Shown: piece after piece, positions 3,340 to 47,137 of the stretch
Layout: each line of letters begins with the position of its first letter
How positions within the stretch are numbered: position 1 is the first letter of the stretch
IMG/VR virus record: IMGVR_UViG_3300025869_002060
Coordinates: 164,349-228,348 of that record
Reading direction: 5' to 3' (one strand)
Length of the DNA stretch: 64,000 nucleotides
Program-made: the position numbers and the translations under genes
The notes under the pieces: generated by a model
The model's input: the letters and a program-made list of their open reading frames with translations, nothing else
Told to the model about the DNA's origin: nothing
Database searches by the model: none

Positions 3340-3340
3340 G

Positions 3341-5225: not shown

Positions 5226-5924
5226 ATGAGTGAACTAATATCTAAAATTATCACAGATCGTGTAAAAGAATCAGGCGACCGCTACTGGGCTGGTGATAAT
5301 ATTTCTAAACATATCCATAACGAATACGAAAAACAAGATTTAATTAATGAAATTGCAGTAGCATTTGAAGATGTTCTTGATGCATTGGTTATTGATAGAT
5401 TCAATGACCCTAACAGTATGGATACTGCAAGACGTCTTGCTAAAATGTATATTAATGAAGTTATGAGTGGCAGGTACGACCCAATGCCTAAGGCAACAGC
5501 CTTTCCTAATCATGTAGATGATGGATACAAAGGTATGTTGGTTGTACGTTCAGAACTTAAAAGTATGTGTTCGCATCATCATCAACCAGTAAGCGGTGTT
5601 GCATACATTGGTATTATTGCCGCAGAAACACTAATTGGTCTTAGCAAGTATACACGTATTGCTCAATGGTGTGCAAGGCGAGGTACACTACAAGAAGAAC
5701 TTAATAATGTTATTGCTAACGAGATTCAAAAAGCAACAGGTAGTCCTAACATAGGTGTTTACGTTCAGGCCACTCATGGTTGTTGCGAAAACAGAGGCAT
5801 TATGGCACATAGTAGTTTAACACAAACAACTGTACTTAGAGGTGCATTTAGTGATGATCCAGGCACTAAGAAAGAGTTTATGGATAACATTAAACTGCAA
5901 CAAGAGTTTGCTTGTGGAAAATAA
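5226..5924 (+). CDS. folE: GTP cyclohydrolase I
   Basis: TARRLAKMY, SMCSHHHQP, GLSKYTRI, LQEEL, HGCCENRG; GGAG RBS. Confidence 0.95.
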   Translation: MSELISKIITDRVKESGDRYWAGDNISKHIHNEYEKQDLINEIAVAFEDVLDALVIDRFNDPNSMDTARRLAKMYINEVMSGRYDPMPKATAFPNHVDDGYKGMLVVRSELKSMCSHHHQPVSGVAYIGIIAAETLIGLSKYTRIAQWCARRGTLQEELNNVIANEIQKATGSPNIGVYVQATHGCCENRGIMAHSSLTQTTVLRGAFSDDPGTKKEFMDNIKLQQEFACGK

Positions 5925-6385
5925 AGAGCACAGTTTTTGGTGCTAGAAAGGAAGTTATGTTTTTAAAGTTACTTGATCGATTAGGTCGAAAAAGAATTGT
6001 TTACGATAGGTTGGATGACGAGCCTTATCTTGAACGTTACTATGTGTTTATTAAAGAAAGAAAACACTTTCCTTTCAATATTTTCCTACACAAATTTCTT
6101 AAAAGCGATCCAGATGATTTACACGATCATCCTTGGGGATATGCTACACTTATTCTTAAAGGTGGATATTGGGAGCATACCCCCGACGGAAAGTTTTGGA
6201 GAGGTCCCGGACATTTTAGAATGTGCAAGTCCAACAATACACACAGAATTGAACTAGACCCTGATGTTCAAGCCTGGACATTGTTTATGCCCGGACCACA
6301 AAGGAAAGACTGGGGATTTATCAAAGACGGTAAATGGATTCAACACGAAAAATATCTTTCATCTAGAAAAATGTTAAAGGAATGA
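5912..6385 (+). CDS. Cupin-fold protein
   Basis: LHDHPW...ILKGGYWE and later HRIEL cupin metal motifs. Confidence 0.7.
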   Translation: MWKIKSTVFGARKEVMFLKLLDRLGRKRIVYDRLDDEPYLERYYVFIKERKHFPFNIFLHKFLKSDPDDLHDHPWGYATLILKGGYWEHTPDGKFWRGPGHFRMCKSNNTHRIELDPDVQAWTLFMPGPQRKDWGFIKDGKWIQHEKYLSSRKMLKE

Positions 6386-6906
6386 CAATGAATAAACTCT
6401 ATATTGACGATACTCAGATTAAAAATGCATGTCATTCCATTGTAACAAAAATGTATAGAGATAACTTTAAACCTAAATACATTGTAGGAATTACACGCGG
6501 CGGGCTAGTTCCAGCTTTATACCTAAGTCATATGACTGGTATTACAATGCATACACTAGATGTTCGTTTACGTGATGGTGATGAACAAGAATCAAATCTA
6601 TGGATGGCCGAAGATGCATTTGGTTATCCTAATCAAGACAGTGGCGGACAAGGAAAAAATATTTTAATTGTAGATGATATAAATGACACTGGTGCAACGT
6701 TCAACTGGATTAAACAAGATTGGCCCTCAGGGTGCTTACCTAACGATCTTCGTTGGAATGAAGTATGGCATAACAATGTACGTTTTGCAAGTATTATTGA
6801 CAATATGGGTAGCAACTTCAAGGTTGACTATTCAGAAATTGAGATTAATAAATCCGAGGAGGATGTGTGGGTAGTATTTCCGTGGGAAGAACCTTTAAGG
6901 GTCTAG
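6382..6906 (+). CDS. Type I phosphoribosyltransferase (xanthine/guanine PRT-like)
   Basis: VGITRGGLVPA, PRPP-binding ILIVDDINDTGAT, C-terminal WVVFPWE. Confidence 0.9.
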   Translation: MTMNKLYIDDTQIKNACHSIVTKMYRDNFKPKYIVGITRGGLVPALYLSHMTGITMHTLDVRLRDGDEQESNLWMAEDAFGYPNQDSGGQGKNILIVDDINDTGATFNWIKQDWPSGCLPNDLRWNEVWHNNVRFASIIDNMGSNFKVDYSEIEINKSEEDVWVVFPWEEPLRV

Positions 6907-7678: not shown

Positions 7679-7706
7679 TATTAAATATTATAAAGGTGAT
7701 TTCTAA

Positions 7707-8198
7707 ATGACATACTACAGTACAAAAACATACGGACACAACATAGGACTAAGTGCAGTGTTCCGTCAACCAAATGCAGATCACTCACATTGCCATTTGT
7801 TACATGGTTATAGTTTGCAGTTTAAATTTACATTTGGTTGTTCTGAATTAGATAAAAAAAACTGGGCCGTTGACTTTGGTGGATTAAAACCACTCAAAGC
7901 ATGGCTTGAAGATAGCTTTGATCATAAGACAGCAATTGATATTGCTGATCCTCATAAACAAGAATTTTATGATTTGCAGGACAAAGACTTATGTGAAGTA
8001 AGAGAATTTGACGGGGTTGGTGCAGAGAAGTTTGCAGAACATGCATGGCGCTTTGCAGACAAACTCGTCAAAGAAATGACAAATGGACGTTGTTGGTGTG
8101 AGAGTTGTGAGTGTGCAGAACACGGGGCAAATTCTGCTATTTATTCTCCGTATGTCGTACAAAAAACCTCGTTCAAGGAGAACCATAATGAACAATAA
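7707..8198 (+). CDS. queD: 6-carboxy-5,6,7,8-tetrahydropterin synthase
   Basis: HCHLLHGY, WAVDFGGLK, FDHK, AEKFAEH, CAEHGANSA motifs. Confidence 0.9.
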   Translation: MTYYSTKTYGHNIGLSAVFRQPNADHSHCHLLHGYSLQFKFTFGCSELDKKNWAVDFGGLKPLKAWLEDSFDHKTAIDIADPHKQEFYDLQDKDLCEVREFDGVGAEKFAEHAWRFADKLVKEMTNGRCWCESCECAEHGANSAIYSPYVVQKTSFKENHNEQ

Positions 8199-8394
8199 AC
8201 TACTATTGGCATTGCAGGCAAGGTATCAAGCACAAAAGGCAGAAGGCCTTGCTAATATCGATGTCTACATGCAAAATCCAGCAGGTATTGGCGAGCATCC
8301 AGACATCACTGGTGCTATTGCTGAACAAATTGCTAAGATTGCAGAAGCAGACGATGGTTTGCTTGTGTTAGAAGAAAACTTCAGTGACAAGTAA
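8188..8394 (+). CDS. Small hypothetical phage protein
   Basis: GGAG RBS before ATG 8188 (the track start at 8083 is too far upstream); NPAGIGEHPDI motif. Confidence 0.75.
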   Translation: MNNKLLLALQARYQAQKAEGLANIDVYMQNPAGIGEHPDITGAIAEQIAKIAEADDGLLVLEENFSDK

Positions 8395-8512
8395 TACTGA
8401 CAAACAGTGGATATGCCCGGTTTGTGGGCATATCCATTATGGCGAAACTCACCCTGAGGTTGATTGCCCTATCTGTGCATTGCCTGGTGAAGAATACATT
8501 GAACAAGAATAG
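8384..8512 (+). CDS. Rubredoxin-like / zinc-ribbon micro-protein (42 aa, not in ORF track)
   Basis: Manual translation from GTG: MTSNTDKQWICPVCGHIHYGETHPEVDCPICALPGEEYIEQE; two CxxC knuckles. Confidence 0.8.
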   Translation: MTSNTDKQWICPVCGHIHYGETHPEVDCPICALPGEEYIEQE

Positions 8513-8523
8513 AAAGGCACACT

Positions 8524-9396
8524 ATGAACTGGCGTTATAGCGAAGAATTTTATAGTATACAAGGTGAAGGCAAATTTGTAGGAGTACCTAGTGTATTTTT
8601 ACGTATGTTTGGTTGCAACTTTCGTTGTAAGAACTTTGGTAGATCCAAAGACGAAACCTTTGCTAAAAACGAACCAAATCCTGAAGTGCAAGAAGTTATT
8701 GATAATATTGATCAATACGAGAATTTTGGAGATTTACCAATTGTGCATACTGGTTGCGATACGTATGCAAGTATCTATCCGCAGTTTAAACGTTTTATGA
8801 AAAATCTTAACACTGACGAGGTAGCTGAACGTTTACTAGCATTAACACCAAATGGTTCATGGACCATGCCCAATGGGCAAGATATTCATCTAATTATAAC
8901 TGGCGGAGAGCCATTGCTTGGTTGGCAAAAAAATTATGTTGAATTATTTAATCATCCGAAAATGAAAGATTTAAAAAATGTTACAATCGAAACAAATGGT
9001 ACTCAAGCTCTTAGACCGGAGTTTGTTGACTTTATCACACATCAAGAAAGAATATGTATTACTTTCTCGTGTAGCCCAAAGTTATCCGTTTCGGGAGAGT
9101 CTTGGAGTGATGCTATTAACCCTGACATTGTTAGCACTTACTATAATCTTCCTAATAGTGATTTGTATCTTAAGTTTGTGGTTAACGATGATGTGGATGT
9201 GGACGAAGTTAGCAGAGCTACTGAAGAGTATCGTGCGGCCGGGGTTGAGTGTCCAGTATATACTATGCCGCTTGGCGGACGGTATGACGAGTATAAAGCA
9301 ACGACTAAAAGGGTCGCAGAACTCGCAATGCAAAAAGGGTGGAGATATACACCCAGACTACACGTTGATATCTTCGGAAATGCATGGGGCACGTAA
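8524..9396 (+). CDS. queE: 7-carboxy-7-deazaguanine synthase (radical SAM)
   Basis: EFYSIQGEG, FLRMFGCNFRC...GCDT, ITGGEPLL, IETNGT, SPKL, PRLHVDIFG. Confidence 0.92.
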   Translation: MNWRYSEEFYSIQGEGKFVGVPSVFLRMFGCNFRCKNFGRSKDETFAKNEPNPEVQEVIDNIDQYENFGDLPIVHTGCDTYASIYPQFKRFMKNLNTDEVAERLLALTPNGSWTMPNGQDIHLIITGGEPLLGWQKNYVELFNHPKMKDLKNVTIETNGTQALRPEFVDFITHQERICITFSCSPKLSVSGESWSDAINPDIVSTYYNLPNSDLYLKFVVNDDVDVDEVSRATEEYRAAGVECPVYTMPLGGRYDEYKATTKRVAELAMQKGWRYTPRLHVDIFGNAWGT

Positions 9397-9469
9397 GAAA
9401 GAAACGCCATTAGAAAAGGCTATGAAAGCACCCATTGACATTGACAAACTGAGGAACCGAGGATTTTGA
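9380..9469 (+). CDS. Possible 29-aa micro-ORF
   Basis: MHGARKKETPLEKAMKAPIDIDKLRNRGF bridges the queE end and the next start with overlaps at both ends. Confidence 0.35.
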   Translation: MHGARKKETPLEKAMKAPIDIDKLRNRGF

Positions 9470-10137
9470 CCAAAGTAGTACACACCCAAATAGTATGTGG
9501 AATGCCACACCTACTATCAAATTTTGATTTGAACCTAAATCATCTTAGCAAAGAACTTGGAGACATACACTGGCATTTTATGTATGATCGTCCCGGTGAT
9601 GCAACAGTAAAAGGTGAGCGTGTTTATCAAAGTTTTCTACGTCTTGATTTTGACATTGTAGATACATTTAAAGAAGATGATGTACTTCATATTGTTACAA
9701 CAGGAGAACAAGTTGACGATGCTATCTTTAAGACTGTACATACATTTGGTAAAAATAAAATTACCTTGTACAGTATTGGGATAATTATTGATAAGGGTTC
9801 ACTTGTTAAAGCTATAACTGCAAAAAATAGAGACTTAGAGTTTTGGGCCAATCACAGAAATTTTAAACGTGTTACACGTTCAAAAGAAATATTAGCCTCA
9901 TTTAATACGTATCCTAGTATTGATTTTAATTGTGCTGGAATACTATATTGTGCAAACTATGTTAGGTACATATACCAGTTTGCAGATATACTAAAGAAAC
10001 AAGTTACTGTTAAAAATATGTACTTCTTTGGTAACATTAAACCATATCAAGTACTTGATATTGTTCAGGACGAACACGGCATACATATTATTAGTGAAGA
10101 CCGATTAATAGCAACTTGTATATGCGAACTAGAATAG
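9466..10137 (+). CDS. Double-hotdog protein resembling the Pnap_2097/LnmK-related biosynthetic family
   Basis: GMPHL...LSKELGDIHW, ERVYQSFL, DFNCAGILY, YFFGNI motifs recalled from that family. Confidence 0.55.
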   Translation: MTKVVHTQIVCGMPHLLSNFDLNLNHLSKELGDIHWHFMYDRPGDATVKGERVYQSFLRLDFDIVDTFKEDDVLHIVTTGEQVDDAIFKTVHTFGKNKITLYSIGIIIDKGSLVKAITAKNRDLEFWANHRNFKRVTRSKEILASFNTYPSIDFNCAGILYCANYVRYIYQFADILKKQVTVKNMYFFGNIKPYQVLDIVQDEHGIHIISEDRLIATCICELE

Positions 10138-10147
10138 GAGTAGAAAT

Positions 10148-10489
10148 ATGAATTCATTTTTTGATAAGTTTAAGAAGAAACCTGCTACAGCCACTCCTCC
10201 AAAGCAGAAGCCTAAGAAGACTCCAAAGGAAATTGCTACCGAAGCAGGTGAACCATGGGTTGAAGTTATCTCAATGGATATTGATCCGGATGATGTTGGC
10301 AACGGGGCATTTGAATTAGACTGGAATGATAAATTTATTGTTAATTTAGTCAGAGCAGGATACCAGGTCAAACCAGGCGAAGCCGAAGAATTAATTGTAG
10401 ATCGTTGGTTTCAATCTGTTTGTCGCAATGTTGTTATGGAAAACTATGAACAAGAACAAGCAGATCCTGATATTCGAAATCAGAAGTAA
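10148..10489 (+). CDS. Hypothetical protein
   Basis: GGAG RBS; 113 aa. Confidence 0.75.
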   Translation: MNSFFDKFKKKPATATPPKQKPKKTPKEIATEAGEPWVEVISMDIDPDDVGNGAFELDWNDKFIVNLVRAGYQVKPGEAEELIVDRWFQSVCRNVVMENYEQEQADPDIRNQK

Positions 10490-11217
10490 TGTCAAAGATA
10501 CTATACATTAACGGCGACAGTCATGCGGCCGGCGCTGAAGCAGTGGTTTCATTTGCATTTGCAGAAGATGATCCACATAACTATCCTCCGCCTAATCGTA
10601 AACCACACCCAGAAAACGAAATAGCAAGTTTTGGCAACGTATTAGCAGATCAATTGGGCATGACTCCTTACAATGATAGCGAGAGTGCTAGTAGCAATGA
10701 TCGTATTGTACGTACTACCCGGAAATGGCTTGAAGAAACATCAGAAAAACCTGGACTAGTATTAATTGGATGGAGTACTTGGGAAAGAGAAGAATGGTTC
10801 CATGATAATGAATATTTTCAGGTAAATTGTAGTGGAGTTGACCTGGTCCCACGAGATTTGCGAGATAAATACAAGCAGTGGATTATAACACAATCAAAAA
10901 AAGAACGTGAACTAGAATATAAATGGCATGATGAAATACATCAGTTCCATTTAGAATTATCAAGAAAGAACATAAATCACCTATTCTTTAATACATATCA
11001 GTATTTCTTTAACACTGTGTCGTTTAGTCGTGAAAAACTAAATTGGGACAACTGTTATATCAACCCATACGAACAAGACGGAACATATTACTATTACCTA
11101 AAGAAACAGGGTTATAGTACAGTAAACAAAAATAGTTATCATTACCCAAAATTAGCACATCGTGCTTGGGCAGACTATTTAAGACAATATCTCCAAAGAG
11201 GCGGAAATCACATTTAA
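10489..11217 (+). CDS. SGNH/GDSL-like protein
   Basis: Block I INGDSH; C-terminal HYPKLAH. Confidence 0.6.
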   Translation: MSKILYINGDSHAAGAEAVVSFAFAEDDPHNYPPPNRKPHPENEIASFGNVLADQLGMTPYNDSESASSNDRIVRTTRKWLEETSEKPGLVLIGWSTWEREEWFHDNEYFQVNCSGVDLVPRDLRDKYKQWIITQSKKERELEYKWHDEIHQFHLELSRKNINHLFFNTYQYFFNTVSFSREKLNWDNCYINPYEQDGTYYYYLKKQGYSTVNKNSYHYPKLAHRAWADYLRQYLQRGGNHI

Positions 11218-34655: not shown

Positions 34656-36140
34656 TTAACTGCAAACATCTATGCCGTATTGATCTTCAAAACGATCAGC
34701 ATCAGCTCTAGTGTTTACTATTGGTTCACCTCTGATATTTAAACTGGTGTTTAGTAACATTGGGCATCCAGTTAGTATAAACCATTTTTCTAACATCTCT
34801 CTAATATGTTTAAACTCTGGCTCTTTACCTACAGTTTGTACTCTGCTTGAATTGTCAACATGACATATAGCAGGAAACTTTTTTGGAGATTTACATATTC
34901 CAACACTTTGCATATACGGACTATGAACCCAAGCCTTGGGCAAATCAAAATATGCTTGTGCTTGTTCTTCTAATATCATTGGAGCAAACGGCCTAAACTT
35001 TTGTCTACGTTTAATTTCGTTTACTCTATCTTTAATATCATCTCCTCTTGGATCTGCTAGTAAACTTCTATTGCCTAATGCTCGTGGTCCAAACTCTGCA
35101 CGACCACTTGCTACACCTACAATTTGTTTTTCTAATAATAGATCAAGTAATTGGTCCACTGGATATTCACCCGGGATATCACAGCCCAAAAACGGACCTT
35201 GCCAGTTAAGTTTCTTTTTATAACTCAATGCCGCCGCACCTAAACTGCTACCTGCATCACCTGGGTTAGGCATAATCCAAATATTATCAAAACTATCAAT
35301 TTTACTATTAGCGACACAATTGAGAGCAACACCACCCATTAATACCAAGTTGTTGCTGTAAAAACTATGCCTTGCTCTATTGCATAAACGAGTTACCAAG
35401 TGTTCAGTTATAGCTTGTACACTAGCCGCAAGATCAATATCCAATGCTCCTGGCAAATAATCTTCGTCAATACCAGCATGACAATTTTGTCTAAATGTAA
35501 AGTCTCGTGAGTTTAGAATAAAGTCGTTGTATATTGTATCAAAATGTTTATTCTCACCCCAAGCGGCCATGCCCATAAAAATATACTCTTCGTCCATTGG
35601 CTTTAAACCAACATGTTTTGTCATTGCACTATAGAATAATCCCAAACTATGAGGATAACCTTGCTTCCATATTTGACGGTATCGTGCAATGCCTTGGTTA
35701 TCATACATTGCTCGCCATATACTAGCGGTTGTAAATTCGCCAATGGCATCTATTACAACTACTGTAGCAACATCATATGGTGATGTTTGAAACCCTGCGG
35801 CCGCATGTGATAAGTGATGATCATACTTATGAATTTTAGTGTTACACTGAAAAGGAACGCCTTGATTCTTTAATACATGCCTTACTGTAATGTTTGACCA
35901 ATCAATTTTTTGGCCTGCATAACACTGTCTTACTTGTTTCTTAATTGGATCTTCGTAGTATGCAATAGTATCAATATCGTCAAAATCAACTTCGCTCAAC
36001 AGCTCACGACATAAGTCTTTATCATTTTTATTTCTACTATATCTTTCGCTATGACTTGCAAATGAAATATTTCCTTGTTCGTCTACAACGCTTACTGCCG
36101 CATCATGAAATCCAGCTGATATTCCTAATATACTCATCAA
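34656..36140 (-). CDS. Carbamoyltransferase (NodU/CmcH/TobZ family)
   Basis: GISAGFHDAA, HHLSHAA, VIDAIGE, GGVALNC, GDAGSSLG, EFGPRALGNRS, FRPFAP, LLNTSLN. Confidence 0.95.
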   Translation of the reverse strand: MMSILGISAGFHDAAVSVVDEQGNISFASHSERYSRNKNDKDLCRELLSEVDFDDIDTIAYYEDPIKKQVRQCYAGQKIDWSNITVRHVLKNQGVPFQCNTKIHKYDHHLSHAAAGFQTSPYDVATVVVIDAIGEFTTASIWRAMYDNQGIARYRQIWKQGYPHSLGLFYSAMTKHVGLKPMDEEYIFMGMAAWGENKHFDTIYNDFILNSRDFTFRQNCHAGIDEDYLPGALDIDLAASVQAITEHLVTRLCNRARHSFYSNNLVLMGGVALNCVANSKIDSFDNIWIMPNPGDAGSSLGAAALSYKKKLNWQGPFLGCDIPGEYPVDQLLDLLLEKQIVGVASGRAEFGPRALGNRSLLADPRGDDIKDRVNEIKRRQKFRPFAPMILEEQAQAYFDLPKAWVHSPYMQSVGICKSPKKFPAICHVDNSSRVQTVGKEPEFKHIREMLEKWFILTGCPMLLNTSLNIRGEPIVNTRADADRFEDQYGIDVCS

Positions 36141-36759
36141 TAACCTTTGCTATTCTTTTGTGTCCAAGTTCTAAAGGATGACCTCCAGGACCTTTAACAC
36201 AATTTCCTTGCCATTCTAGTATGCCGTCTTTAGGCCAACCAACAAAGAATCTTTTATCAATTTCTCTAAACTGAGCTTCAAGAAGTTGATAGTATTCGTC
36301 ATAGTAACCTTGTAAACCAGCTACATTATACATTAGATAACGTTGATTACGATTTAGTAAAAATCCTTGCAATGCAATTATCTGATTAAACTGTTTTCGA
36401 AATCCCCAAGCGATATCATAACTATACTTATAATAGTCTGTTATCCAGTCTGGTTCTTTTTGTGTTCGAGCACGAATTGACATGAACTGCGAAGGTTCTG
36501 TATTTGGTAAATCAAGTGCTTCAAAACGACTTTGTTCCGGCCAACTTATTAATACTAAATCAAATGTTTCGTTGATTAAAGTTTCAATTGTTGTTCTAAA
36601 AACATAATCAGAACTAGCACCGCAAAGTCCTAGATTAACTACTTCGTCAAAGCCCAATAAGTTTTTCATTAGATATGGGTAGGCATCAACTTCTCTATTA
36701 GGAAGTTCATCTCCATATGTAAAACTATCACCAACGGTTAATAATCTACGTTTACTCAT
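36103..36759 (-). CDS. SGNH-like protein
   Basis: VGDSFTYG, NLGLCGASSD, GGHPLELGH. Confidence 0.65.
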   Translation of the reverse strand: MSKRRLLTVGDSFTYGDELPNREVDAYPYLMKNLLGFDEVVNLGLCGASSDYVFRTTIETLINETFDLVLISWPEQSRFEALDLPNTEPSQFMSIRARTQKEPDWITDYYKYSYDIAWGFRKQFNQIIALQGFLLNRNQRYLMYNVAGLQGYYDEYYQLLEAQFREIDKRFFVGWPKDGILEWQGNCVKGPGGHPLELGHKRIAKVIDEYIRNISWIS

Positions 36760-36860
36760 TTATAGATAAACGGATCCCGTTTGCGTAATTCTTTAAGTTT
36801 TTTGCGATATGCAATCTCTAATTTCACACGGTTAATTAAACTCTTAAACCATTTGATCAT
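36756..36860 (-). CDS. 34-aa basic micro-protein (not in ORF track)
   Basis: MIKWFKSLINRVKLEIAYRKKLKELRKRDPFIYK; stop overlaps the next ATG (ATGA). Confidence 0.75.
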   Translation of the reverse strand: MIKWFKSLINRVKLEIAYRKKLKELRKRDPFIYK

Positions 36861-37626
36861 TGAAAAACTCCTGCATTAGGTTTGCGGCTGATTTATGTGC
36901 ATCTTCTAAGGGGTGTGTAGTGCCTACCTTGTATTTATTCTCTAGTGCCCACTGGTAAAAACCTCTAGGGTTCTGAGTTTCACCATTCTTTGTTCCTTCT
37001 GGAAACCAAAACCATTTGTTCATATCTATTAGATTGTACAAAGTTTTGATTGACACATCGGCATTTTCTATTGTATAATTGTATAATATACAGTTGTCAG
37101 CACAGGTAAACATGTAGGGAATACTATTAGATTTTAAGTAGTTTTGTAAGTACACTATTTCTTTTAGTGTGCTATATATTTCCCAGTATTCACTGCTACC
37201 AACATGTTTATAGAATGTTTGAGCAAAGCCAGCAACACCTGTCTCGTTTGCTCTTTTAATAGTATCTTGTTGAGCCGTTAGAATACCATCATCTTGGGTA
37301 TGGAACTCTTTTTCAATTGAAGATAAGTCACTTTCAATTGTCCACGAGTTAATTGAATACCAATGCCCTGTACGTTGTTTGGTATCGTAATTGAAACGAA
37401 ACTCATAGCGTCCTGGAAATGTCCAACTAACTATAGCAAACTTATCTTTTGTTAATGACTCTAATGCATTAATTGTTTGTCTAGCGATTGCTTCGTTGCT
37501 ATTGCCAGGTGTTGCTACATTTATATAATTGGTATATTGTTGACTAACCAACTTTGTAAAATTATTATCAGAGTGTTCTAGTTCACTTCCTGCAACAAAA
37601 CTATCACCCCCGGCTACTATAATCAT
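36844..37626 (-). CDS. SGNH-like protein
   Basis: AGGDSFVAG, NVATPGNSNE, TTHPLEDAH. Confidence 0.65.
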   Translation of the reverse strand: MIIVAGGDSFVAGSELEHSDNNFTKLVSQQYTNYINVATPGNSNEAIARQTINALESLTKDKFAIVSWTFPGRYEFRFNYDTKQRTGHWYSINSWTIESDLSSIEKEFHTQDDGILTAQQDTIKRANETGVAGFAQTFYKHVGSSEYWEIYSTLKEIVYLQNYLKSNSIPYMFTCADNCILYNYTIENADVSIKTLYNLIDMNKWFWFPEGTKNGETQNPRGFYQWALENKYKVGTTHPLEDAHKSAANLMQEFFNDQMV

Positions 37627-38677
37627 AACCTGGTTTTAACCTTTCAATTTGTACGTCATAATAATCCTTGTCTGTCCAGCAATAATCAAAATCACATGAA
37701 GCCTCAAGTGTTTCAATTTTTACAATGTCTAAGTGTTCGCCAATGATCTCCCACACTGTTTCAGGATTGTCTGTACCAAAACTACCTACTAGATCAACTT
37801 GTCCAACTGAATGATATCCATAGTTGTATTGTGTGTCATTGTGATTAAAACCATTACGCTCTAACCAATCTGCATATTCATCCATTCGTTGCTTGTGCCA
37901 CGGATATTCACCAGCATAGGTAATATCACGTGACCATTCAATGTCAAACTCGCCACTGTAGTAACGCAAATGAGTAATCTCTTCACACATTGCGTCTGTT
38001 AAATCAGGTGCGCCTTCATCAACGAACACTTCATATAATGTTTTTCCTACTTGAGTCCAGTGTTGGTAAACAGTACCAAAGGTACGATCATATCTTTCCT
38101 TGTTGAATGTCCGCTTATGCTCGTCGGGATAATCAAATCTAGGAGCATTTAAAAATGTTGTGATCTGAGACGGACGCATCCACTGCGGTGCCTCAATTTG
38201 TTTCTTCTGGCTCAGCATTAATGATTCTGCTTCGTGACACAAATTGTTTAACTGTCTAATAGCAAACTTAGTTTCGTGATTTGCTTTTTTATACCAGTCA
38301 CTCAATCCCCATGCACTACCTTGTAGTACTTCAAAATGATTATGCAATCTGTTCATAATATCCTGATTTGGGTTCATGCCATCTCTCAATGTTTTTGGTG
38401 TAAATATTTCTCTTATTATATACTCCTTGTTAAAAAAATCATTGATAGTATTTTTGACCCACTGTAACTCTTTACATATGAAGTTAATATCTCTAGCAGT
38501 ATTAGGAAAACCCAAGAATAAAAAGTTCTTTTCTAAGTAGGAATCATTTATTAATAATCCATTTAATGCACCTAGCCAGTTACGTCCCATTATAGTTTGC
38601 TCAACGTCAATATGAAAATCAACTGTTTTACTTTTGTTAACTGGATTTCTTAATACTACTTTAACTTCTCGTGTCAT
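37604..38677 (-). CDS. Hypothetical protein downstream of the radical SAM array
   Basis: About 357 aa, ATGA-coupled to radical SAM gene 38674; start refined to MTREVKV. Confidence 0.75.
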   Translation of the reverse strand: MTREVKVVLRNPVNKSKTVDFHIDVEQTIMGRNWLGALNGLLINDSYLEKNFLFLGFPNTARDINFICKELQWVKNTINDFFNKEYIIREIFTPKTLRDGMNPNQDIMNRLHNHFEVLQGSAWGLSDWYKKANHETKFAIRQLNNLCHEAESLMLSQKKQIEAPQWMRPSQITTFLNAPRFDYPDEHKRTFNKERYDRTFGTVYQHWTQVGKTLYEVFVDEGAPDLTDAMCEEITHLRYYSGEFDIEWSRDITYAGEYPWHKQRMDEYADWLERNGFNHNDTQYNYGYHSVGQVDLVGSFGTDNPETVWEIIGEHLDIVKIETLEASCDFDYCWTDKDYYDVQIERLKPGYDYSSRG

Positions 38678-39972
38678 ATTTCTAACCACCAATCTAATAT
38701 ATCATGCCGTGAAGATAGAATATCTGTCATCGTCAGATCTTGTGTTCTAATTTGTTCTAATTTTAATATACGTGCTTTGCCTTTTTGTAGTCCTGCTTCA
38801 TACTGATCTGGCCATTGTTCTGCAAATGTTGGTCTATTCTTTAGTTGTACTAGCACATCTTTTAACGCACCATCAACTGAAGGAATAAGTTCATCTAACC
38901 ATTTATCCAACAGGTTACGAGGCAATGCCAATGGCGACATTACAATGTCAGGACTAAAACTAAAGATTACTTTAGCAAGTATTCCTACACCTAATCTTTT
39001 TGCGAGTTCTTGTATTTTTTGGACTTCAAAGAGTCCTGGTAAGGTAAGAGTGAAGTCAATACGAATTTGGCGCGAGTGGTTGCTGACCTCAACTCCTTTA
39101 TTGAAGTTTTCAAGCCACTGGTCAAAATTGAGACCTGTTCGAATATACTCTCCAATTCGTCCCGTGCCATCGAGGCTTGCACATATTTGCCAATCACGTA
39201 GCCTAGCCAAAATATCAGTATAAAGATTAGTGCCAGAATAACTAATCCTAGATAAGTTAGTGTTATATCTTGCATAAACATTTGGTCCATCTCCTAGCTC
39301 TATAATTCTCTTCATATACCTCCAATGCTGTTCATACATTAAAGGTTCGCCACCTACCCAGTAGACTTCTTCTACGCGGTGACTTTCAACTGCTTCAGCA
39401 AACTCCTGTTCTATCTGAGTTGACTGAAATTTTTCTATTTGTTTTTTGAGATTAGGTCGCATCCAGTTGTTCTTAGGATCTTCCCAATTTATCATATTAT
39501 GCTTACGTTGCTCGGCTTCCCAACTTGAACTGAGCATATCACCACACATACGACATTTGAAGTTGCATAGGTTTGAAAACCTATAATCCCAACTAACTGG
39601 CTTTAAACGGGTCGTACCATCAGGATCGGTGTGATCCCATATACTATCATATTTATGTCCAAATAGGTTATTAAAATAACTTCTGTAAACATCTGTGTTT
39701 AATAACTTGTTAGTACAAACTTCACATTCACTAAGTTCTTCACCAGACATCATTCTACGCCTAACACTTTTCATGTGTTCGCTGTTCCAGTGTTCGTCTA
39801 GTGTGGTAGGTTTATATTCACCTGTTCCTGAGTCTGTATCAATATACTGCTCAAAGTTCTGTGCTGGTTCTCTACTAGCACAACAAAGTCTGCGTTCTGT
39901 TTGCGGACTTAGGTAGGTATGTGTCCACGGAGCCATACACAAATTTTCAGGTTTTTTGTCTGGTTTTATCAT
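38674..39972 (-). CDS. Radical SAM protein with N-terminal SPASM/twitch-like domain (copy 1)
   Basis: CMAPW...CC...CEVC; CNFKCRMC; VGGEPL; YNTN. Confidence 0.9.
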   Translation of the reverse strand: MIKPDKKPENLCMAPWTHTYLSPQTERRLCCASREPAQNFEQYIDTDSGTGEYKPTTLDEHWNSEHMKSVRRRMMSGEELSECEVCTNKLLNTDVYRSYFNNLFGHKYDSIWDHTDPDGTTRLKPVSWDYRFSNLCNFKCRMCGDMLSSSWEAEQRKHNMINWEDPKNNWMRPNLKKQIEKFQSTQIEQEFAEAVESHRVEEVYWVGGEPLMYEQHWRYMKRIIELGDGPNVYARYNTNLSRISYSGTNLYTDILARLRDWQICASLDGTGRIGEYIRTGLNFDQWLENFNKGVEVSNHSRQIRIDFTLTLPGLFEVQKIQELAKRLGVGILAKVIFSFSPDIVMSPLALPRNLLDKWLDELIPSVDGALKDVLVQLKNRPTFAEQWPDQYEAGLQKGKARILKLEQIRTQDLTMTDILSSRHDILDWWLEI

Positions 39973-39973
39973 A

Positions 39974-40483
39974 TTAAAAATTTACATATAAAGATTTTCG
40001 AATAACATTGTTAGGAACTTTACCTTTCATGCCGTGTTGTATTGTGTGCGAATTTAATAACATTAGTCCAGTATTTACTTCATAGTCAACTTCGTACTTG
40101 ATATCATTTTCATACCAGTAAGTACCCATTGATTCACTGTTACTTTCTTCTCCTAAGTACAACATAATAATATTACAAACACTATTAGGATCATCAGTAT
40201 GCATTGCGTTTTCATAGCCAGCATGATCAAACCATATTTCAACACCACGCACCTTTTGCTTGTCAATATCAAGGCTAGAAAATCTACCTGCTATTTCATT
40301 GCGTACAATACTATCACGATCAATATCTAACCACCACAACTCTCTGTAGCCTCCAAGATGCCATGTTTCAGTAATAGGGTCAAATTGCGTTGTATGATTA
40401 AACAACTTATTTTTAACACCATTGGGGATATTGTGTTTTAACTTGTATCCGTTTGTGGATATTTGTTGTACCTCACGTATCAC
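39974..40483 (-). CDS. 2OG-Fe(II) oxygenase-like protein
   Basis: MHTD (HxD), IMLYL, TIQHGM, RKSLYVNF. Confidence 0.6.
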   Translation of the reverse strand: MIREVQQISTNGYKLKHNIPNGVKNKLFNHTTQFDPITETWHLGGYRELWWLDIDRDSIVRNEIAGRFSSLDIDKQKVRGVEIWFDHAGYENAMHTDDPNSVCNIIMLYLGEESNSESMGTYWYENDIKYEVDYEVNTGLMLLNSHTIQHGMKGKVPNNVIRKSLYVNF

Positions 40484-41696
40484 TGTAACCCATTGCCTTT
40501 GCTATTTGTGTATGTGTTTCTAAAAAGTTTTCTTTACGATATGTATCTGTTTGTTTCATTAATCTAACAAAGTCTTTACCATTACTGCTAGGTCCATTGT
40601 CAATAAACTTTATTAGTTTATCAATTTCATTTTTATCGTGTGGATGAAATTGATCTTGTTTTAAACGATTGGTTACTATTTGTTTTGCTTCTATTGTCAT
40701 TTCACCAATGTTTTGGTGGCGCGGATCATGTAACATATTAAAGTGATGATAATCAAAGTCCTGTGTACGCATCCAGTCACATAAATCTTTCAAGTAGTAG
40801 ACATTCTGAATATTTACAGTTAAACAAATCTGTAACTTAATATTGTTATTCTGATCACGCAAGTCTCTAAAACGTTTTATATTTTCGCATACTTCGTCCC
40901 AGCGAGCTCCAAAACGTTCGTACTCAAATCGTTTGCCTACGTTATCAATACTAAATGCAATCTCAACATACTTAAACTCTTTCCATAAATGTACAAACTC
41001 TTCTGGATATTGTGTGCCGTTGGTATTGTAATGTATTTCAATATCTTTTGCAAAGCCGCCGTCAACTGCTTGTTGTAGCAATTGAAAGTGTTCTTTGATC
41101 ATAAAAGGTTCACCACCTGTAAACTCAAAGTATTTTATGTTAGGCAGTAAGTCAATCATGTTCTCCCAAAATACTTCAGACTCACGAGGCCACTTGCCAT
41201 CTTTAAGCCACTTGTATGCAATATGATCCTTGGCATTTCTATTTTTGTATTTGCGTATATAATCAATTTCTTCTCTTGCCCATTTACTGCTTGACCAACT
41301 TCCACATATACGACATTTAAGATTACAAATGTTTCCAAGTTTTAGATCAATAAACCATAAACTGTCAGGATTGGTGTCAGAAAAATCTATCAACGGGCGT
41401 TCATGTTTGAAACGCACATCTGTGTTCATGCGTTTGCTTGTGCGTCCTGCATCTTCTTCATCCCAACAGCGACTACATGTTTTAGGTTTTTCTCCACGCA
41501 AAAACTGTTCACGTAAATCAACCATGTATTCGCTTTTATATATTTCTTCAAGTGTATTTTCTCGTAGTGCATACTTTGTACCATCTGGTTTTGTAATTTC
41601 GTCCATTGCTAAACAACAAGGTCGACTGGTACCCATTGGTGTTGTTTCCATACTAACCCAAGGTAACATACATATTGTCTTGGAATTATTATCCAC
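40473..41696 (-). CDS. Radical SAM protein with N-terminal SPASM/twitch-like domain (copy 2)
   Basis: CMLPW...CC...CSRC; CNLKCRIC; TGGEPF; YNTNG. Confidence 0.9.
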   Translation of the reverse strand: MDNNSKTICMLPWVSMETTPMGTSRPCCLAMDEITKPDGTKYALRENTLEEIYKSEYMVDLREQFLRGEKPKTCSRCWDEEDAGRTSKRMNTDVRFKHERPLIDFSDTNPDSLWFIDLKLGNICNLKCRICGSWSSSKWAREEIDYIRKYKNRNAKDHIAYKWLKDGKWPRESEVFWENMIDLLPNIKYFEFTGGEPFMIKEHFQLLQQAVDGGFAKDIEIHYNTNGTQYPEEFVHLWKEFKYVEIAFSIDNVGKRFEYERFGARWDEVCENIKRFRDLRDQNNNIKLQICLTVNIQNVYYLKDLCDWMRTQDFDYHHFNMLHDPRHQNIGEMTIEAKQIVTNRLKQDQFHPHDKNEIDKLIKFIDNGPSSNGKDFVRLMKQTDTYRKENFLETHTQIAKAMGYSDT

Positions 41697-43014
41697 GTGC
41701 CGACTCCAACTCCGGAAATGTTTTCCAAAAATCTTCGTTGCGTATGCGATCTAACTTTGTAATTTCTTCTTCAAACCTTGGCCATTCTTTTGATCCATCG
41801 TTGCTCATCATAAAGTTAATAGCACTTTCAAATCCTGTTGTTGCTCTACGTAACTTATCTTGTGGATCTAACCATTCAATGTGTTTGCGATATGCAGGTT
41901 CAATAACTTCTTTTTTAAACTTCTCTGGAAAAATATCAATACGATACCATTCAGGACTTTGACAAATATTAACATTAAAATCCTGTGGTTGAATAAACCC
42001 TTTTTCAACCCAGTCTTTGTGAAAGTCTAGTACATGTAAAACGTTTTGACTAGTGACTGTAGCACTAACATAAAAGTCAACATGTGGCACTTCAGCCATC
42101 ATACGTACTCTGTTTTCTTCAGTCTGTTTCCAATCTGCACCTTTGCGTATTAGCTCTGCTTGTGGACCCATGCCATCAAGACTAGCACCAACATTTACTG
42201 TTTTAAACTGTTTCCAATAATCAAATACATGCTTTTTCTTGTAACGCATTTCACTAAAGTTTGTATTGTATACCAAACGCACATCAGTCTTGCCTAGTTC
42301 AATTAAACGCTCAAGCAAGTAATAATGCTCCTTCATAATCAAAGGTTCACCACCTGCAAAATATACTTGTTCTAAATACGGAATATGTTCTTCCATTTGA
42401 TTCAGCATTCCGTCTTCATCGCCAGTTGTGTACTCTACTCTGGCCATGTCTCTTTTAAGCACATCAGGTACTCTTCCGTACAGTTTTACATGATCGTTGA
42501 ACCAGTTACTGCTAAAAATAGGACCACAAGAACGGCATTTAAAGTTACATAGGTTACTGAAGCGTATATCCCAATAACGCAACTTAAACTCAGGATGTTC
42601 GCCATCTTCTGTTGTTTGATTTACTTCTTCGATCAAATGTCCGTAGTTTCTATTAGCATCATTTCGCATACTAAAGAAACCGTTTTGTTCTTGTTCATAG
42701 CATTTAGTACATTCTTTACATGGCTTGTCTTCAAGCATGTTTTTACGCATTGTTTTATACGCATCTTGATTCCATACTTCACGCATTGTGTCTTTGCGTA
42801 AGTCTCCAATTGGATGCCAGTAATCACCTAAACAACAAGGATACACTCTACCATCTGGAAAGGCATGCATGTGAACCCAAGGCAACATACAAAAGTTATC
42901 CTCTTTGACAAGTCTGCTAAGTTGCTTGTCTGTTAAATCTTCAGGCTTGACAAAGTGCGGAGTTCTTTCGTTATAATCATATTTTTCATAAAAGTCTTTT
43001 TTACTTGAGTCCAT
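41689..43014 (-). CDS. Radical SAM protein with N-terminal SPASM/twitch-like domain (copy 3)
   Basis: CMLPW...CC...CTKC; CNFKCRSC; AGGEPL; YNTN. Confidence 0.9.
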   Translation of the reverse strand: MDSSKKDFYEKYDYNERTPHFVKPEDLTDKQLSRLVKEDNFCMLPWVHMHAFPDGRVYPCCLGDYWHPIGDLRKDTMREVWNQDAYKTMRKNMLEDKPCKECTKCYEQEQNGFFSMRNDANRNYGHLIEEVNQTTEDGEHPEFKLRYWDIRFSNLCNFKCRSCGPIFSSNWFNDHVKLYGRVPDVLKRDMARVEYTTGDEDGMLNQMEEHIPYLEQVYFAGGEPLIMKEHYYLLERLIELGKTDVRLVYNTNFSEMRYKKKHVFDYWKQFKTVNVGASLDGMGPQAELIRKGADWKQTEENRVRMMAEVPHVDFYVSATVTSQNVLHVLDFHKDWVEKGFIQPQDFNVNICQSPEWYRIDIFPEKFKKEVIEPAYRKHIEWLDPQDKLRRATTGFESAINFMMSNDGSKEWPRFEEEITKLDRIRNEDFWKTFPELESARG

Positions 43015-44356: not shown

Positions 44357-45440
44357 AGTGTTCCTCCATTTCGGATATATAGTTTACTATCTTTGTGCCA
44401 CGATGTCTATCTCTAATAGTAATCATATCTAAAAATTCTTTCCAGTTTTCTTCATTGGAGTTATCCAATGTATTGATAATTCCTTCTAAACCATTTTGTG
44501 CTTCGTAGTCAACAGCACGAAGTCTATCTTGTGCAAGTTGAGCTAATTCTTTTGGCAAACATACAGGTGCCAGATAATGAGGCTTTGTTAATATATCAAA
44601 CTGTACAAAAAGCTCTTCCTGTTCAGCCCACTCTAATAATCTATCAATATATAATACATTTAAATTTTGTACGACTGTGTTTACAAAAATATTAGCATCG
44701 GGTATTTGACGCATCAACTCTATATTATTAGTTATAACATTCCATTTACTTGGATATCTTATGTAATGATTAAGTTCTGCATATCCGTCAATACTTAAAC
44801 ACATCTTAATGTCGTGTGCTGACAATACATCAACCCAACTTTGATCAAATTTAGTTCCATTTGTTGCAATCATTATTTCTTTACGTTGTGTCAATGATGA
44901 AAGAATATCGCGAACCCAAGGCAACATAAACGGTTCGCCTCCTCTTAGAATAAAACTATCACAGTGTTCCATTATTTCAAGTATCTTGTAATTGTCTTTT
45001 TCATTCCAATCGTATTTCTTCTGATCCCATACCTTGTCAAACAGTTTGTTTTCTTCAACTAAAAATTGACTACTAGATTGCGGATTACACATCAAGCATT
45101 TCAAGTTACATAAATTTGATAACTGTATTTCCCAATCCAGTGGCTGTTCTGTTTGTTCTGTTATGTCACTCCAACGTTCATTGCTGTACTGTCGAAAACT
45201 TTTTGATCCTTGCTCCTCTTGTTTATAACAACGAACACATTCATCACTGTGTTCATTGTTCTTTATACGCTTTCTTAGATCATTGAGATAATCGCTATTC
45301 CACCACTCGTCAACAGAGTGTGTTTTCATATTAAAATCTGTTGTAACAAAACTACGACAACAAGGCATAAAACGTCCTTGGGTGTCTACTAGACTATGCA
45401 TAAACGGACGCACACAAAATTTATCGTTATCTTTGAGCAT
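44349..45440 (-). CDS. Radical SAM protein with N-terminal SPASM/twitch-like domain (copy 5)
   Basis: CVRPF...CC...CVRC; CNLKCLMC; RGGEPF; ATNGT. Confidence 0.9.
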   Translation of the reverse strand: MLKDNDKFCVRPFMHSLVDTQGRFMPCCRSFVTTDFNMKTHSVDEWWNSDYLNDLRKRIKNNEHSDECVRCYKQEEQGSKSFRQYSNERWSDITEQTEQPLDWEIQLSNLCNLKCLMCNPQSSSQFLVEENKLFDKVWDQKKYDWNEKDNYKILEIMEHCDSFILRGGEPFMLPWVRDILSSLTQRKEIMIATNGTKFDQSWVDVLSAHDIKMCLSIDGYAELNHYIRYPSKWNVITNNIELMRQIPDANIFVNTVVQNLNVLYIDRLLEWAEQEELFVQFDILTKPHYLAPVCLPKELAQLAQDRLRAVDYEAQNGLEGIINTLDNSNEENWKEFLDMITIRDRHRGTKIVNYISEMEEHFA

Positions 45441-47136: not shown

Positions 47137-47137
47137 T

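What the first reader, a model, noticed from the sequence alone, without database searches (positions are those of the whole stretch)
9466..10137. LnmK/Pnap_2097-like hotdog protein plus a phage ACP: a possible acyl-loading route
Motifs GMPHL...KELGD.HW and DFN.AG.LY...FFGN resemble, from memory, the Pnap_2097 family related to LnmK. LnmK is a double-hotdog acyltransferase/decarboxylase that loads an ACP in leinamycin biosynthesis (established). The window also encodes an ACP (50328) and four SGNH-like proteins (seen). Together these could form an acyl-CoA to ACP to sugar acylation relay, which I do not know from phages (inference).
Basis: partly seen in the sequence, partly recalled or inferred. 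Interest (0 to 1): 0.6.

Follow-up and report, generated by a model that had tools for sequence, protein, structure and literature searches.

The report
Phage LnmK-like double-hotdog accessory enzyme
A jumbo phage carries a real, rare, shortened relative of the acyl-loading enzyme LnmK that keeps LnmK's two catalytic residues, but it is an optional gene dropped into a variable slot beside QueE, and its proposed link to the phage acyl carrier protein remains unproven.

Summary
It hits TIGR04098 (LnmK) and TIGR04099 (Pnap_2097) at E 1e-12 to 1e-13, but at half or less of their curated cut-offs. An AlphaFold model (pLDDT 82.5) is a double hotdog: Z 18.9 to acyl-ACP thioesterases and 17.4 to LnmK. 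A family profile aligns window Y54 and F57 with LnmK's catalytic Tyr62 and Phe65. The homology claim therefore holds.

The genomic context does not tie the gene to one pathway. It sits after FolE, an XGPRT-like phosphoribosyltransferase, QueD and QueE. However, 75 related phage loci keep that backbone without it, and 47 related records, one of them 92% complete, lack it entirely. In other relatives the gene lies beside B12-radical-SAM genes, NifU/IscA or fatty-acid-desaturase paralogues.

The phage ACP (50328-50582, - strand) is 40 kb away. One relative has an ACP 3 kb upstream of the gene. The record has no other ACP loader.

The best reading is an accessory acyl-thioester acyltransferase/decarboxylase, possibly an ACP loader. 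This is unproven, and the sugar-acylation relay is speculation.

The parts
9466..10137 (+). The finding itself: a 223-aa double-hotdog protein, a divergent phage branch of the LnmK/Pnap_2097 superfamily. Y54 and F57 align to LnmK Tyr62 and Phe65.
8524..9396 (+). QueE-like radical SAM gene immediately upstream (69-nt gap). It is a neighbour, not an obligate partner.
   Evidence: phrog_2076 E 2e-51 and QueE NCBIfam hits below cut-off; 75 related loci keep it without the hotdog gene
8384..8512 (+). 42-aa rubredoxin-like zinc/iron ribbon (context)
   Evidence: PF21349 E 3e-9
7707..8198 (+). QueD-like 6-carboxytetrahydropterin synthase (context); its motif reads CxxxHGY
   Evidence: PF01242 46.7 bits, phrog_2389 E 2e-38
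6382..6906 (+). Purine-type (XGPRT-like) phosphoribosyltransferase (context)
   Evidence: PF00156 E 1e-11; NF006613 E 8.5e-14, below cut-off
5912..6385 (+). Cupin-like protein; the matching PHROG family is named 'cysteine dioxygenase' (context)
   Evidence: phrog_4786 E 7e-38
5226..5924 (+). GTP cyclohydrolase I FolE (context)
   Evidence: PF01227 130 bits
10148..10489 (+). 113-aa conserved backbone gene that forms the downstream edge of the variable slot holding the hotdog gene
   Evidence: phrog_13349 E 1e-12; follows QueE directly in most relatives
10489..11217 (+). DUF6071, an SGNH-like protein with a GDSH motif. It is a backbone gene, present in relatives that lack the hotdog gene.
   Evidence: PF19547 E 8e-8
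50328..50582 (-). Acyl carrier protein with a DSL phosphopantetheine-site motif. It is the candidate acceptor; the link is inferred only.
   Evidence: PF00550 E 3.6e-14; 46% identical ACP sits beside desaturase paralogues in a sister phage
38674..47136 (-). Downstream of the ACP on the same strand: an FeS_assembly_P protein (46834-47136), six paralogous radical SAM genes with an N-terminal SPASM domain, and one unannotated 169-aa ORF (39974-40483) (context)
34656..37626 (-). Carbamoyltransferase (34656-36140) and two SGNH-like genes (36103-36759 with DUF6071/GDSL hits; 36844-37626 by motif only) at the end of the same minus-strand run (context)

Best explanation
The gene encodes a compact (223 aa) double-hotdog enzyme. 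It is a phage-borne, fast-evolving offshoot of the LnmK/Pnap_2097 superfamily. By analogy with LnmK, it most likely binds an acyl- or carboxyacyl-thioester (CoA or ACP-bound), forms an acyl-O-Tyr54 intermediate, possibly after decarboxylation with the F57 region stabilising the enolate, and passes the acyl group to a thiol acceptor. The phage's own ACP is the most plausible acceptor, because the record encodes no other ACP loader. The gene is accessory cargo in a variable slot between QueE and a conserved backbone gene. It is not a component of the FolE/PRT/QueD/QueE deazapurine module. Shown: the gene, the homology, the fold, the conserved Tyr/Phe pair, and the patchy, mobile distribution. 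Inferred: thioester substrate, acyl transfer, ACP as acceptor, and any downstream use by desaturase-like, hydroxylase-like, radical SAM or SGNH-like enzymes.
For: Homology: TIGR04098 E 2.2e-13 and TIGR04099 E 3.1e-12. All 45 profile-found relatives hit both families. The nearest Atlas clusters are named Pnap_2097 (0.94). Fold: pLDDT 82.5, pTM 0.82. Matches are LnmK Z 17.4 at 17% identity, and acyl-ACP thioesterases Z 18.5-18.9 (Foldseek). Catalytic residues: the A2 profile hits LnmK 4hzn at E 1.6e-12, and Y54/F57 fall on the Tyr and Phe of LnmK's Y-L-A-F. These are Tyr62 (nucleophile) and Phe65 (enolate stabilisation) according to PMC11350588. Both are invariant in A1. Y54 and F57 are at least 90% conserved in A2. 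ACP logic: a bacterial relative (L029) is followed by an ACP-like 97-aa gene and a ketosynthase. In L020 an ACP lies 3 kb upstream on the same strand. The record has an ACP but no PPTase, AMP-ligase, ketosynthase or malonyl-transacylase. Acyl-chain context: the gene is directly adjacent to fatty-acid-desaturase paralogues in L025 and L026. A sister phage's ACP is directly followed by such paralogues. Accessory status.
Against: Scores are half or less of the curated cut-offs (50 vs 100 bits; 47 vs 125 bits). The protein is about 50-100 residues shorter than LnmK and Pnap_2097 proteins. The family-invariant H35 is Thr in LnmK, so the chemistry may differ. The ACP is 40 kb away on the opposite strand. 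No ACP was found within 10 kb of the gene in L004, L006, L010, L018 or L023-L026, nor in four hotdog-bearing records of 73-171 kb, although these are fragments. None of LnmK's own β-branching partners was seen beyond an ACP: no ketosynthase was found, and HMG-CoA-synthase-like and enoyl-CoA-hydratase genes were not searched for. Fold similarity cannot separate a transferase from a hydrolase (Z values are tied within 1.5). No activity has been tested.
Confidence: 0.5

Rival explanations
1. Fat-type acyl-ACP (or acyl-CoA) thioesterase. It hydrolyses host or phage acyl-ACP and releases free fatty acids that the phage's desaturase-like and hydroxylase-like enzymes or the host membrane then use.
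For: The two best structural matches are bacterial acyl-ACP thioesterases: 4gak Z 18.9 and 2ess Z 18.5 (Foldseek E 2.6e-9). The gene is adjacent to FA_desaturase paralogues in L025 and L026. Some Atlas neighbours carry PF01643/PF20791.
Against: No Pfam Acyl-ACP_TE hit even at E 0.1. Sequence profiles reach LnmK at E 1.6e-12; apart from LnmK they reach only single-hotdog thioesterases, weakly (E 0.007 or worse), and no Fat-type enzyme. Identity is 8-10% to Fat-type structures (15% to 2ess) against 16-17% to LnmK. The C-terminal D-x-N motif lacks the His that, from my knowledge of plant FatB, completes the thioesterase catalytic set; it matches LnmK's version instead.
Confidence: 0.15
2. Deazapurine-pathway enzyme. 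It acts on 7-carboxy-7-deazaguanine or its ribonucleotide, made by FolE/QueD/QueE and the phosphoribosyltransferase. One example is the decarboxylase role that a UbiD enzyme (TubF) plays in tubercidin synthesis.
For: The gene sits 69 nt after QueE. The QueE-hotdog adjacency is seen in seven lineages that fall in three places on a QueE tree. The cluster has FolE, QueD, QueE and an XGPRT-like PRT but no QueC or TGT/DpdA. LnmK is a decarboxylase. Tubercidin synthesis uses CDG plus PRPP and then a decarboxylase (PMC6112128).
Against: 75 of 80 QueE loci keep FolE-QueE-orf10148-exonuclease with no hotdog gene. 47 related records, including a 342 kb, 92%-complete one, have none anywhere, and the positive control was 5 of 5. 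Equally close homologues (46-47% identity) sit in clusters with no Que genes nearby. The same slot carries MetK or other cargo in other phages. Decarboxylating a pyrrole carboxylate is chemically unlike a thioester enolate decarboxylation (inference).
Confidence: 0.08
3. Accessory factor for radical SAM / Fe-S enzymes, for example handling a by-product or a cofactor precursor, rather than an acyl-carrier enzyme.
For: Immediate neighbours in independent contexts are QueE (window), a B12-radical-SAM pair (L004), radical SAM-NifU and IscA (L010/L024), B12-radical-SAM (L025), and SufE plus SAM synthetase (L020/L021).
Against: Records of these phages show up to 11 radical-SAM-like matches (5 in the window's phage), and auxiliary genes cluster together, so such adjacency is expected often by chance. 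L023, L026 and L006/L018 have no radical SAM gene next to it. No hotdog protein is known to me in such a role. The conserved LnmK Tyr/Phe argue for thioester chemistry.
Confidence: 0.1

Closest known systems
LnmK (Streptomyces atroolivaceus leinamycin pathway; PDB 4HZN, 6X7L; NCBIfam TIGR04098)
   Same: Double-hotdog fold over the whole length (Z 17.4, 217 residues aligned, 17% identity). Profile-level homology (E 1.6e-12). The Y-x-[SA]-F motif with the catalytic Tyr and Phe is conserved, as are the C-terminal D-x-N...L-Y-x-A-x-Y and G-N motifs.
   Different: 223 aa against 319 aa. Scores half the family cut-off. His35 replaces LnmK's Thr in the G-D-x-H-W motif. It is phage-encoded. No ketosynthase or other polyketide-type gene was found in the record (HMG-CoA-synthase and enoyl-CoA-hydratase not searched for), and no ACP gene is adjacent.
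Pnap_2097 family (NCBIfam TIGR04099, uncharacterised bacterial proteins)
   Same: Nearest by language-model features (0.94). Shares the invariant H-W, N, Y and N columns. One bacterial relative sits beside an ACP-like gene and a ketosynthase.
   Different: Scores 46.6 bits against a cut-off of 125. About 40-60 residues shorter. The family itself has no known function, so membership would not assign one.
Fat-type acyl-ACP thioesterases (PDB 4GAK, 2ESS, plant FatA/FatB; Pfam PF01643)
   Same: Best overall structural superposition (Z 18.5-18.9).
   Different: No sequence-family hit. 8-15% identity. The thioesterase His of the D-x-N-x-H motif is absent (direct reading of the sequence, using my knowledge of FatB).
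DpdL (proposed CDG decarboxylase of phage 7-deazaguanine systems, Hutinet et al. 2023, PMC10516641)
   Same: Both lie beside FolE/QueD/QueE in phages that lack QueC.
   Different: DpdL is a QueD (T-fold) paralogue and comes with a DpdA transglycosylase. This protein is a hotdog, no DpdA/TGT was found, and it is absent from most phages with the same Que module.

Membership tests
LnmK family, TIGR04098 | Score at or above the curated NCBIfam cut-off (100 bits) | tested here: not met
   50.1 bits, E 2.2e-13, two stretches
LnmK family, TIGR04098 | Double-hotdog fold | tested here: met
   AF2 pLDDT 82.5; LnmK Z 17.4, rmsd 4.0, 217 aligned; Foldseek E 6e-7
LnmK family, TIGR04098 | Catalytic Tyr62 (acyl acceptor) and Phe65 (enolate stabilisation) | tested here: met
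   Y54 and F57 align to them in the profile-to-4hzn/4hzo alignment. Their roles are taken from PMC11350588. Both are invariant in A1.
LnmK family, TIGR04098 | Methylmalonyl-CoA decarboxylation and acyl transfer to a dedicated ACP | not testable with these tools
   Needs enzymology. The interface prediction gave no verdict and is not used as evidence.
LnmK family, TIGR04098 | Genomic partnership with an adjacent ACP and β-branching / polyketide genes | tested here: not met
   The ACP is 40 kb away on the other strand. No ketosynthase, malonyl-transacylase, PPTase or AMP-ligase in the 228 kb record. HMG-CoA-synthase and enoyl-CoA-hydratase families were not searched. Only L020 has an ACP within 3 kb.
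Pnap_2097 family, TIGR04099 | Score at or above the curated cut-off (125 bits) | tested here: not met
   46.6 bits, E 3.1e-12
Pnap_2097 family, TIGR04099 | Shared invariant core (P-H-L, G-D-x-H-W, D-F-N, L-Y-x-A-N-Y, G-N) | tested here: met
   H35, W36, N155, Y161 and N190 are invariant in 45 sequences that all hit TIGR04099
Fat-type acyl-ACP thioesterase, PF01643 | Pfam family match | tested here: not met
   No Pfam family at E up to 0.1
Fat-type acyl-ACP thioesterase, PF01643 | Catalytic Asp/Asn/His of the C-terminal hotdog | tested here: inconclusive
   D153 and N155 are present, but no His follows. The residue roles come from my knowledge of FatB and were not aligned residue by residue here.
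Phage 7-deazaguanine DNA-modification system (Dpd) | DpdA/TGT transglycosylase present | tested here: not met
   PF01702 found nothing in the own record or in 15 related records, including a 92%-complete one. Very divergent DpdA3/4 types could escape this model.
Phage 7-deazaguanine DNA-modification system (Dpd) | The gene co-conserved with the FolE/QueD/QueE module | tested here: not met
   75 of 80 QueE loci lack it. 0 of 47 related records have it, with a 5/5 positive control.

The most novel reading that the evidence does not exclude
In the subset of these ~350 kb phages that carry it, the hotdog protein is a tailoring enzyme of a transglycosylase-free, nucleotide-level 7-deazapurine pathway (FolE, QueD, QueE, then an XGPRT-like phosphoribosyltransferase). 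For example, it could decarboxylate or acyl-activate 7-carboxy-7-deazaguanine ribonucleotide. That would be a hotdog-fold solution to the step done by a UbiD enzyme in tubercidin synthesis, and it would change which deazapurine the phage makes.
Probability: 0.07. Interest if true: 0.85.

Novelty: new variant of a known kind. Interest (0 to 1): 0.42.

Why it matters
LnmK-type double-hotdog acyltransferase/decarboxylases are known from bacterial polyketide pathways. I found no homologue in 50,697 GenBank phage records and no double-hotdog fold match in the BFVD viral structure library. Only 207 cluster representatives among 1.84 billion proteins match the profile. If the protein loads the phage ACP, these jumbo phages would have a self-contained way to charge their own carrier protein. 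That would give a handle on what phage ACPs and the many phage radical SAM, desaturase-like and hydroxylase-like genes are for. The negative result also matters: sitting next to QueE is not evidence of a role in deazaguanine synthesis, because the junction is a cargo slot.

Tried and rejected
1. Pfam and PHROGs scans of the protein gave nothing.

2. tblastn against 50,697 phage records gave no match.

3. The narrow profile (A1) against PDB sequences gave only a chance hit, E 0.12. The broader A2 profile was needed to reach LnmK.

4. Complex prediction of the hotdog protein with the window's ACP scored 0.17, under the mark of 0.32: no verdict. I use it neither for nor against binding.

5. I first favoured a role in the deazapurine pathway, as a CDG decarboxylase comparable to DpdL or TubF, because of the FolE-PRT-QueD-QueE neighbourhood. 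I demoted this after mapping 80 QueE loci and finding no hotdog gene in 47 related records.

6. Co-occurrence of the ACP with the hotdog gene is inconclusive. Five large hotdog-free relatives have no ACP. But two hotdog-free fragments do have one, and most hotdog-bearing fragments show none. Nearly all records are fragments.

7. FA_desaturase co-occurrence does not discriminate: the paralogues also occur in hotdog-free phages.

8. The primary LnmK papers (PMC3567400, PMC8515504) are not held. Residue roles are taken from a review.

9. Promoter and terminator scans around the gene were not above shuffled expectation for promoters and gave nothing usable.

10. The careful QueE tree did not finish in time, so only the quick tree is reported.

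Full report
**The observation**

The ORF listing gives a 223-aa ORF at 9466..10137 on the + strand. It starts with TTG, with GAGGA about 10 nt upstream and AGGA 2 nt upstream. Homologues begin at the same alignment column, so the start is credible.

They are the invariant columns of the family.

Both are far below the curated cut-offs of 100 and 125 bits. Pfam and PHROGs give nothing.

**Where the window comes from**

The window is the last 64 kb of a 228 kb IMG/VR virus record estimated 65% complete. That implies a phage of about 350 kb. By DNA similarity of its 5'-3' exonuclease gene it is distantly related to PA5oct- and RaK2-like jumbo phages.

**Fold and catalytic residues**

An AlphaFold2 model built on 11 homologues has mean pLDDT 82.5 and pTM 0.82, with two β-α-β4 halves.

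- Foldseek against the PDB gives acyl-ACP thioesterases (2ess at E 2.6e-9, FatA, 4gak) and LnmK (6x7p at E 6e-7).
- VIA-align gives 4gak Z 18.9, 2ess Z 18.5, LnmK Z 17.4 (217 residues, 17% identity) and FatA Z 16.9.
- These values are tied within 1.5, so the fold alone does not choose between a hydrolase and a transferase.

Sequence does choose. A profile of 45 relatives hits LnmK chains at E 1.6e-12, and no Fat-type enzyme appears among its PDB matches.

- In that alignment the LnmK segment Y-L-A-F lies on window Y54-Q-S-F57.
- Counting from the printed 4hzo and 6x7l numbering, these are LnmK Tyr62 and Phe65.
- A 2024 review describes Tyr62 as the acyl-accepting nucleophile and Phe65 as stabilising the enolate after decarboxylation of (2R)-methylmalonyl-CoA (PMC11350588).
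- Y54 and F57 are invariant in the close family and at least 90% conserved in the wide alignment.
- The C-terminal D-x-N...L-Y-x-A-x-Y and G-N motifs are also shared with LnmK.
- The family-invariant His35 is Thr in LnmK, so the chemistry need not be identical.

**How rare the family is**

- The word-index search found 12 clusters among 5.8 billion.
- The exhaustive profile search found 207 representatives at E ≤ 1e-3 and 28 at E ≤ 1e-10 among 1.84 billion.
- All 45 members I aligned hit both TIGR04098 and TIGR04099.
- The nearest ESM-Atlas clusters are named Pnap_2097.
- tblastn found nothing in 50,697 GenBank phage records.
- The BFVD viral structure library has no match at E ≤ 0.001.

**Neighbourhood in the window**

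On the + strand the genes run as follows:

| Coordinates | Gene |
|---|---|
| 2158-3339 | GT1 glycosyltransferase |
| 3341-4339 | NDP-sugar epimerase/dehydratase |
| 4336-4929 | Short DegT-like protein |
| 5226-5924 | FolE |
| 5912-6385 | Cupin-like protein |
| 6382-6906 | XGPRT-like phosphoribosyltransferase |
| 6867-7109, 7109-7678 | Two unknowns |
| 7707-8198 | QueD |
| 8188-8394 | 68-aa ORF |
| 8384-8512 | Rubredoxin-like protein |
| 8524-9396 | QueE-like radical SAM |
| 9466-10137 | The hotdog gene |
| 10148-10489 | 113-aa gene |
| 10489-11217 | DUF6071 (SGNH-like) |
| 11286-12275 | 5'-3' exonuclease |

No QueC and no TGT/DpdA were found in the record.

This looked like a tubercidin-type route. 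There, TubE joins 7-carboxy-7-deazaguanine (CDG) to PRPP and a decarboxylase follows (PMC6112128). LnmK is a decarboxylase. I therefore tested whether the hotdog gene belongs to this module.

**The test of the QueE link**

A scan of IMG/VR with the window's QueE found 135 relatives, of which 80 were kept. Mapping the window's proteins and 15 diverse hotdog sequences onto them gave the following:

- Five loci carry the hotdog gene: four copies of this same phage, plus L034.
- The other 75 loci, with QueE 60-69% identical, keep FolE, QueE, the 113-aa gene and the exonuclease, usually with the phosphoribosyltransferase upstream, and have no hotdog gene.
- In many of them the 113-aa gene follows QueE within about 70-200 nt.
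- In others the junction holds SAM synthetase (L093, L099-L102) or unknown genes.
- In L020 and L021 it holds the hotdog gene, overlapped by a 370-aa unknown, then SufE and SAM synthetase.

A profile search of the whole records found no hotdog homologue in 47 related records, including one of 342 kb estimated 92% complete. The same search found it in 5 of 5 positive controls.

On a quick QueE tree the hotdog-bearing loci fall in three places: the window clade, L019, and L020/L021. That needs at least three gains or losses, although well-supported branches alone force only one.

The Que module therefore works without this gene, and the QueE/113-aa junction is a variable cargo slot.

**Other contexts of the gene**

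All the other contigs come from related jumbo phages; for example, the L010 helicase is 67% identical to this phage's.

- L004: the gene sits between a B12-radical-SAM gene and an Asp/Asn-hydroxylase-like gene, in a cluster with more radical SAM genes and a CTP_transf_3 cytidylyltransferase.
- L006 and L018: it follows unannotated genes near a hydroxylase-like gene.
- L010 and L024: the order is radical SAM, NifU, hotdog, IscA.
- L025: it overlaps the end of a fatty-acid-desaturase paralogue that follows a B12-radical-SAM gene.
- L026: a desaturase paralogue follows it, with hydroxylase-like genes nearby.
- The L004/L006/L018 homologues are 46-47% identical to the window protein, as close as those at the QueE slot in L016 and L017. 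The gene has therefore moved between positions.

Records of these phages show up to 11 radical-SAM-like matches each, with 5 in the window's phage. The window's phage also has five tandem desaturase paralogues at 14-18 kb of the record. Adjacency to such genes is therefore only weak evidence.

**The ACP**

The ACP at 50328-50582 (-) is solid: PF00550 at E 3.6e-14, with a DSL motif. On the same strand, downstream of it, lie:

- five unannotated genes;
- an FeS_assembly_P protein (46834-47136);
- six paralogous radical SAM genes with an N-terminal SPASM domain, with one unannotated 169-aa ORF among them (38674-46833);
- a 362-aa unknown;
- two SGNH-like genes (36844-37626 and 36103-36759);
- a carbamoyltransferase (34656-36140).

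For a link to the hotdog gene:

- The record has no PPTase, AMP-ligase, ketosynthase or malonyl-transacylase, so the hotdog protein is the only candidate loader.
- In L020 a radical SAM gene, an ACP, a cupin and a 352-aa gene form a tight run 3 kb upstream of the hotdog gene on the same strand.
- A bacterial relative is followed by an ACP-like gene and a ketosynthase.
- A sister phage's ACP, 46% identical, is directly followed by desaturase paralogues. The hotdog gene is adjacent to such paralogues in L025 and L026.

Against a link:

- The ACP is 40 kb away on the opposite strand.
- No ACP lies within 10 kb of the gene in eight other phage loci.
- ACPs occur in 89 GenBank phage records that have no hotdog homologue.
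- The co-occurrence counts are inconclusive because nearly all records are fragments.
- The interface prediction gave no verdict and counts neither way.

**Conclusion**

The homology, the fold and the catalytic pair support an LnmK-like acyl-thioester enzyme that forms an acyl-Tyr intermediate, with or without decarboxylation. I put that at about 0.5. ACP loading specifically I put at roughly 0.25-0.3.

The rivals are:

- a Fat-type thioesterase (0.15);
- a radical SAM / Fe-S accessory role (0.1);
- a deazapurine tailoring enzyme (0.08).

The DUF6071 gene beside the hotdog gene is a backbone gene that is present without it.

The protein is a new, shortened, phage-borne variant of a known superfamily, not a member of either curated family by score. 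The finding is moderately interesting. What would raise it is a demonstration that it charges the phage ACP.

Noticed in passing
window 5226-9396 (+); also L035-L109 and the related records G011-G015: FolE, a cupin, an XGPRT-like phosphoribosyltransferase, QueD and QueE occur together with no QueC above cut-off and no TGT/DpdA. This holds in this record and in related records, including a 342 kb, 92%-complete one. QueE relatives were found in 135 IMG/VR contigs, and FolE and usually the PRT lie beside QueE in most of the 80 loci mapped. It resembles the tubercidin route (CDG plus PRPP via TubE) rather than the DpdA-based phage DNA modification. It may mark a nucleotide-level deazapurine pathway in jumbo phages. 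Divergent DpdA types could have been missed.
   Followed up: partly
window 9397-10147 and the equivalent junction in L035-L109: The junction between QueE and the conserved 113-aa gene is a variable cargo slot. It is empty in many relatives. Elsewhere it holds SAM synthetase (L093, L099-L102), unknown genes, the hotdog gene, or the hotdog gene plus a 370-aa unknown, SufE and SAM synthetase (L020/L021).
   Followed up: partly
window 38674-47136 (-): Six tandem paralogous radical SAM genes have the SPASM domain at the N-terminus. They are preceded by an FeS_assembly_P protein and lie downstream of the ACP. Two more paralogues lie elsewhere in the record (G000 46757-47791 and 90430-91470). The substrate is unknown.
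   Followed up: partly
G000:C1:14235-18375 (outside the window); L111 (G026 65755-68220): Five tandem fatty-acid-desaturase-family paralogues occur in this phage. In a sister phage an ACP 46% identical to the window's is directly followed by two such paralogues, which hints at ACP-linked acyl-chain chemistry in this phage group.
   Followed up: partly
window 7707-8198 (+): The QueD-like protein has CxxxHGY where the QueD signature is CxxxHGH. The second zinc-binding His is replaced by Tyr. It is not the DpdL variant (LxxxHRHxF) described by Hutinet et al. 2023.
   Followed up: no
window 2158-4929 (+): A GT1 glycosyltransferase, an NDP-sugar epimerase/dehydratase and a DegT-like protein of only 197 aa (the Pfam profile is 360 long, and only its N-terminal part matches) sit just upstream of FolE. 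They are conserved together with the Que genes in L016 and L017.
   Followed up: no
L004 1-13816 (ENA contig; a related phage): A dense cluster holds five radical SAM genes (at least one B12-dependent by Pfam/NCBIfam), a CTP_transf_3 cytidylyltransferase and two Asp/Asn-hydroxylase-like genes around a hotdog homologue. It is an uncharacterised phage tailoring pathway.
   Followed up: partly
window 34656-36140 (-): A full-length carbamoyltransferase (Carbam_trans_N and Carbam_trans_C, E 1e-40 to 1e-50) ends the minus-strand run that also contains two SGNH-like genes.
   Followed up: no
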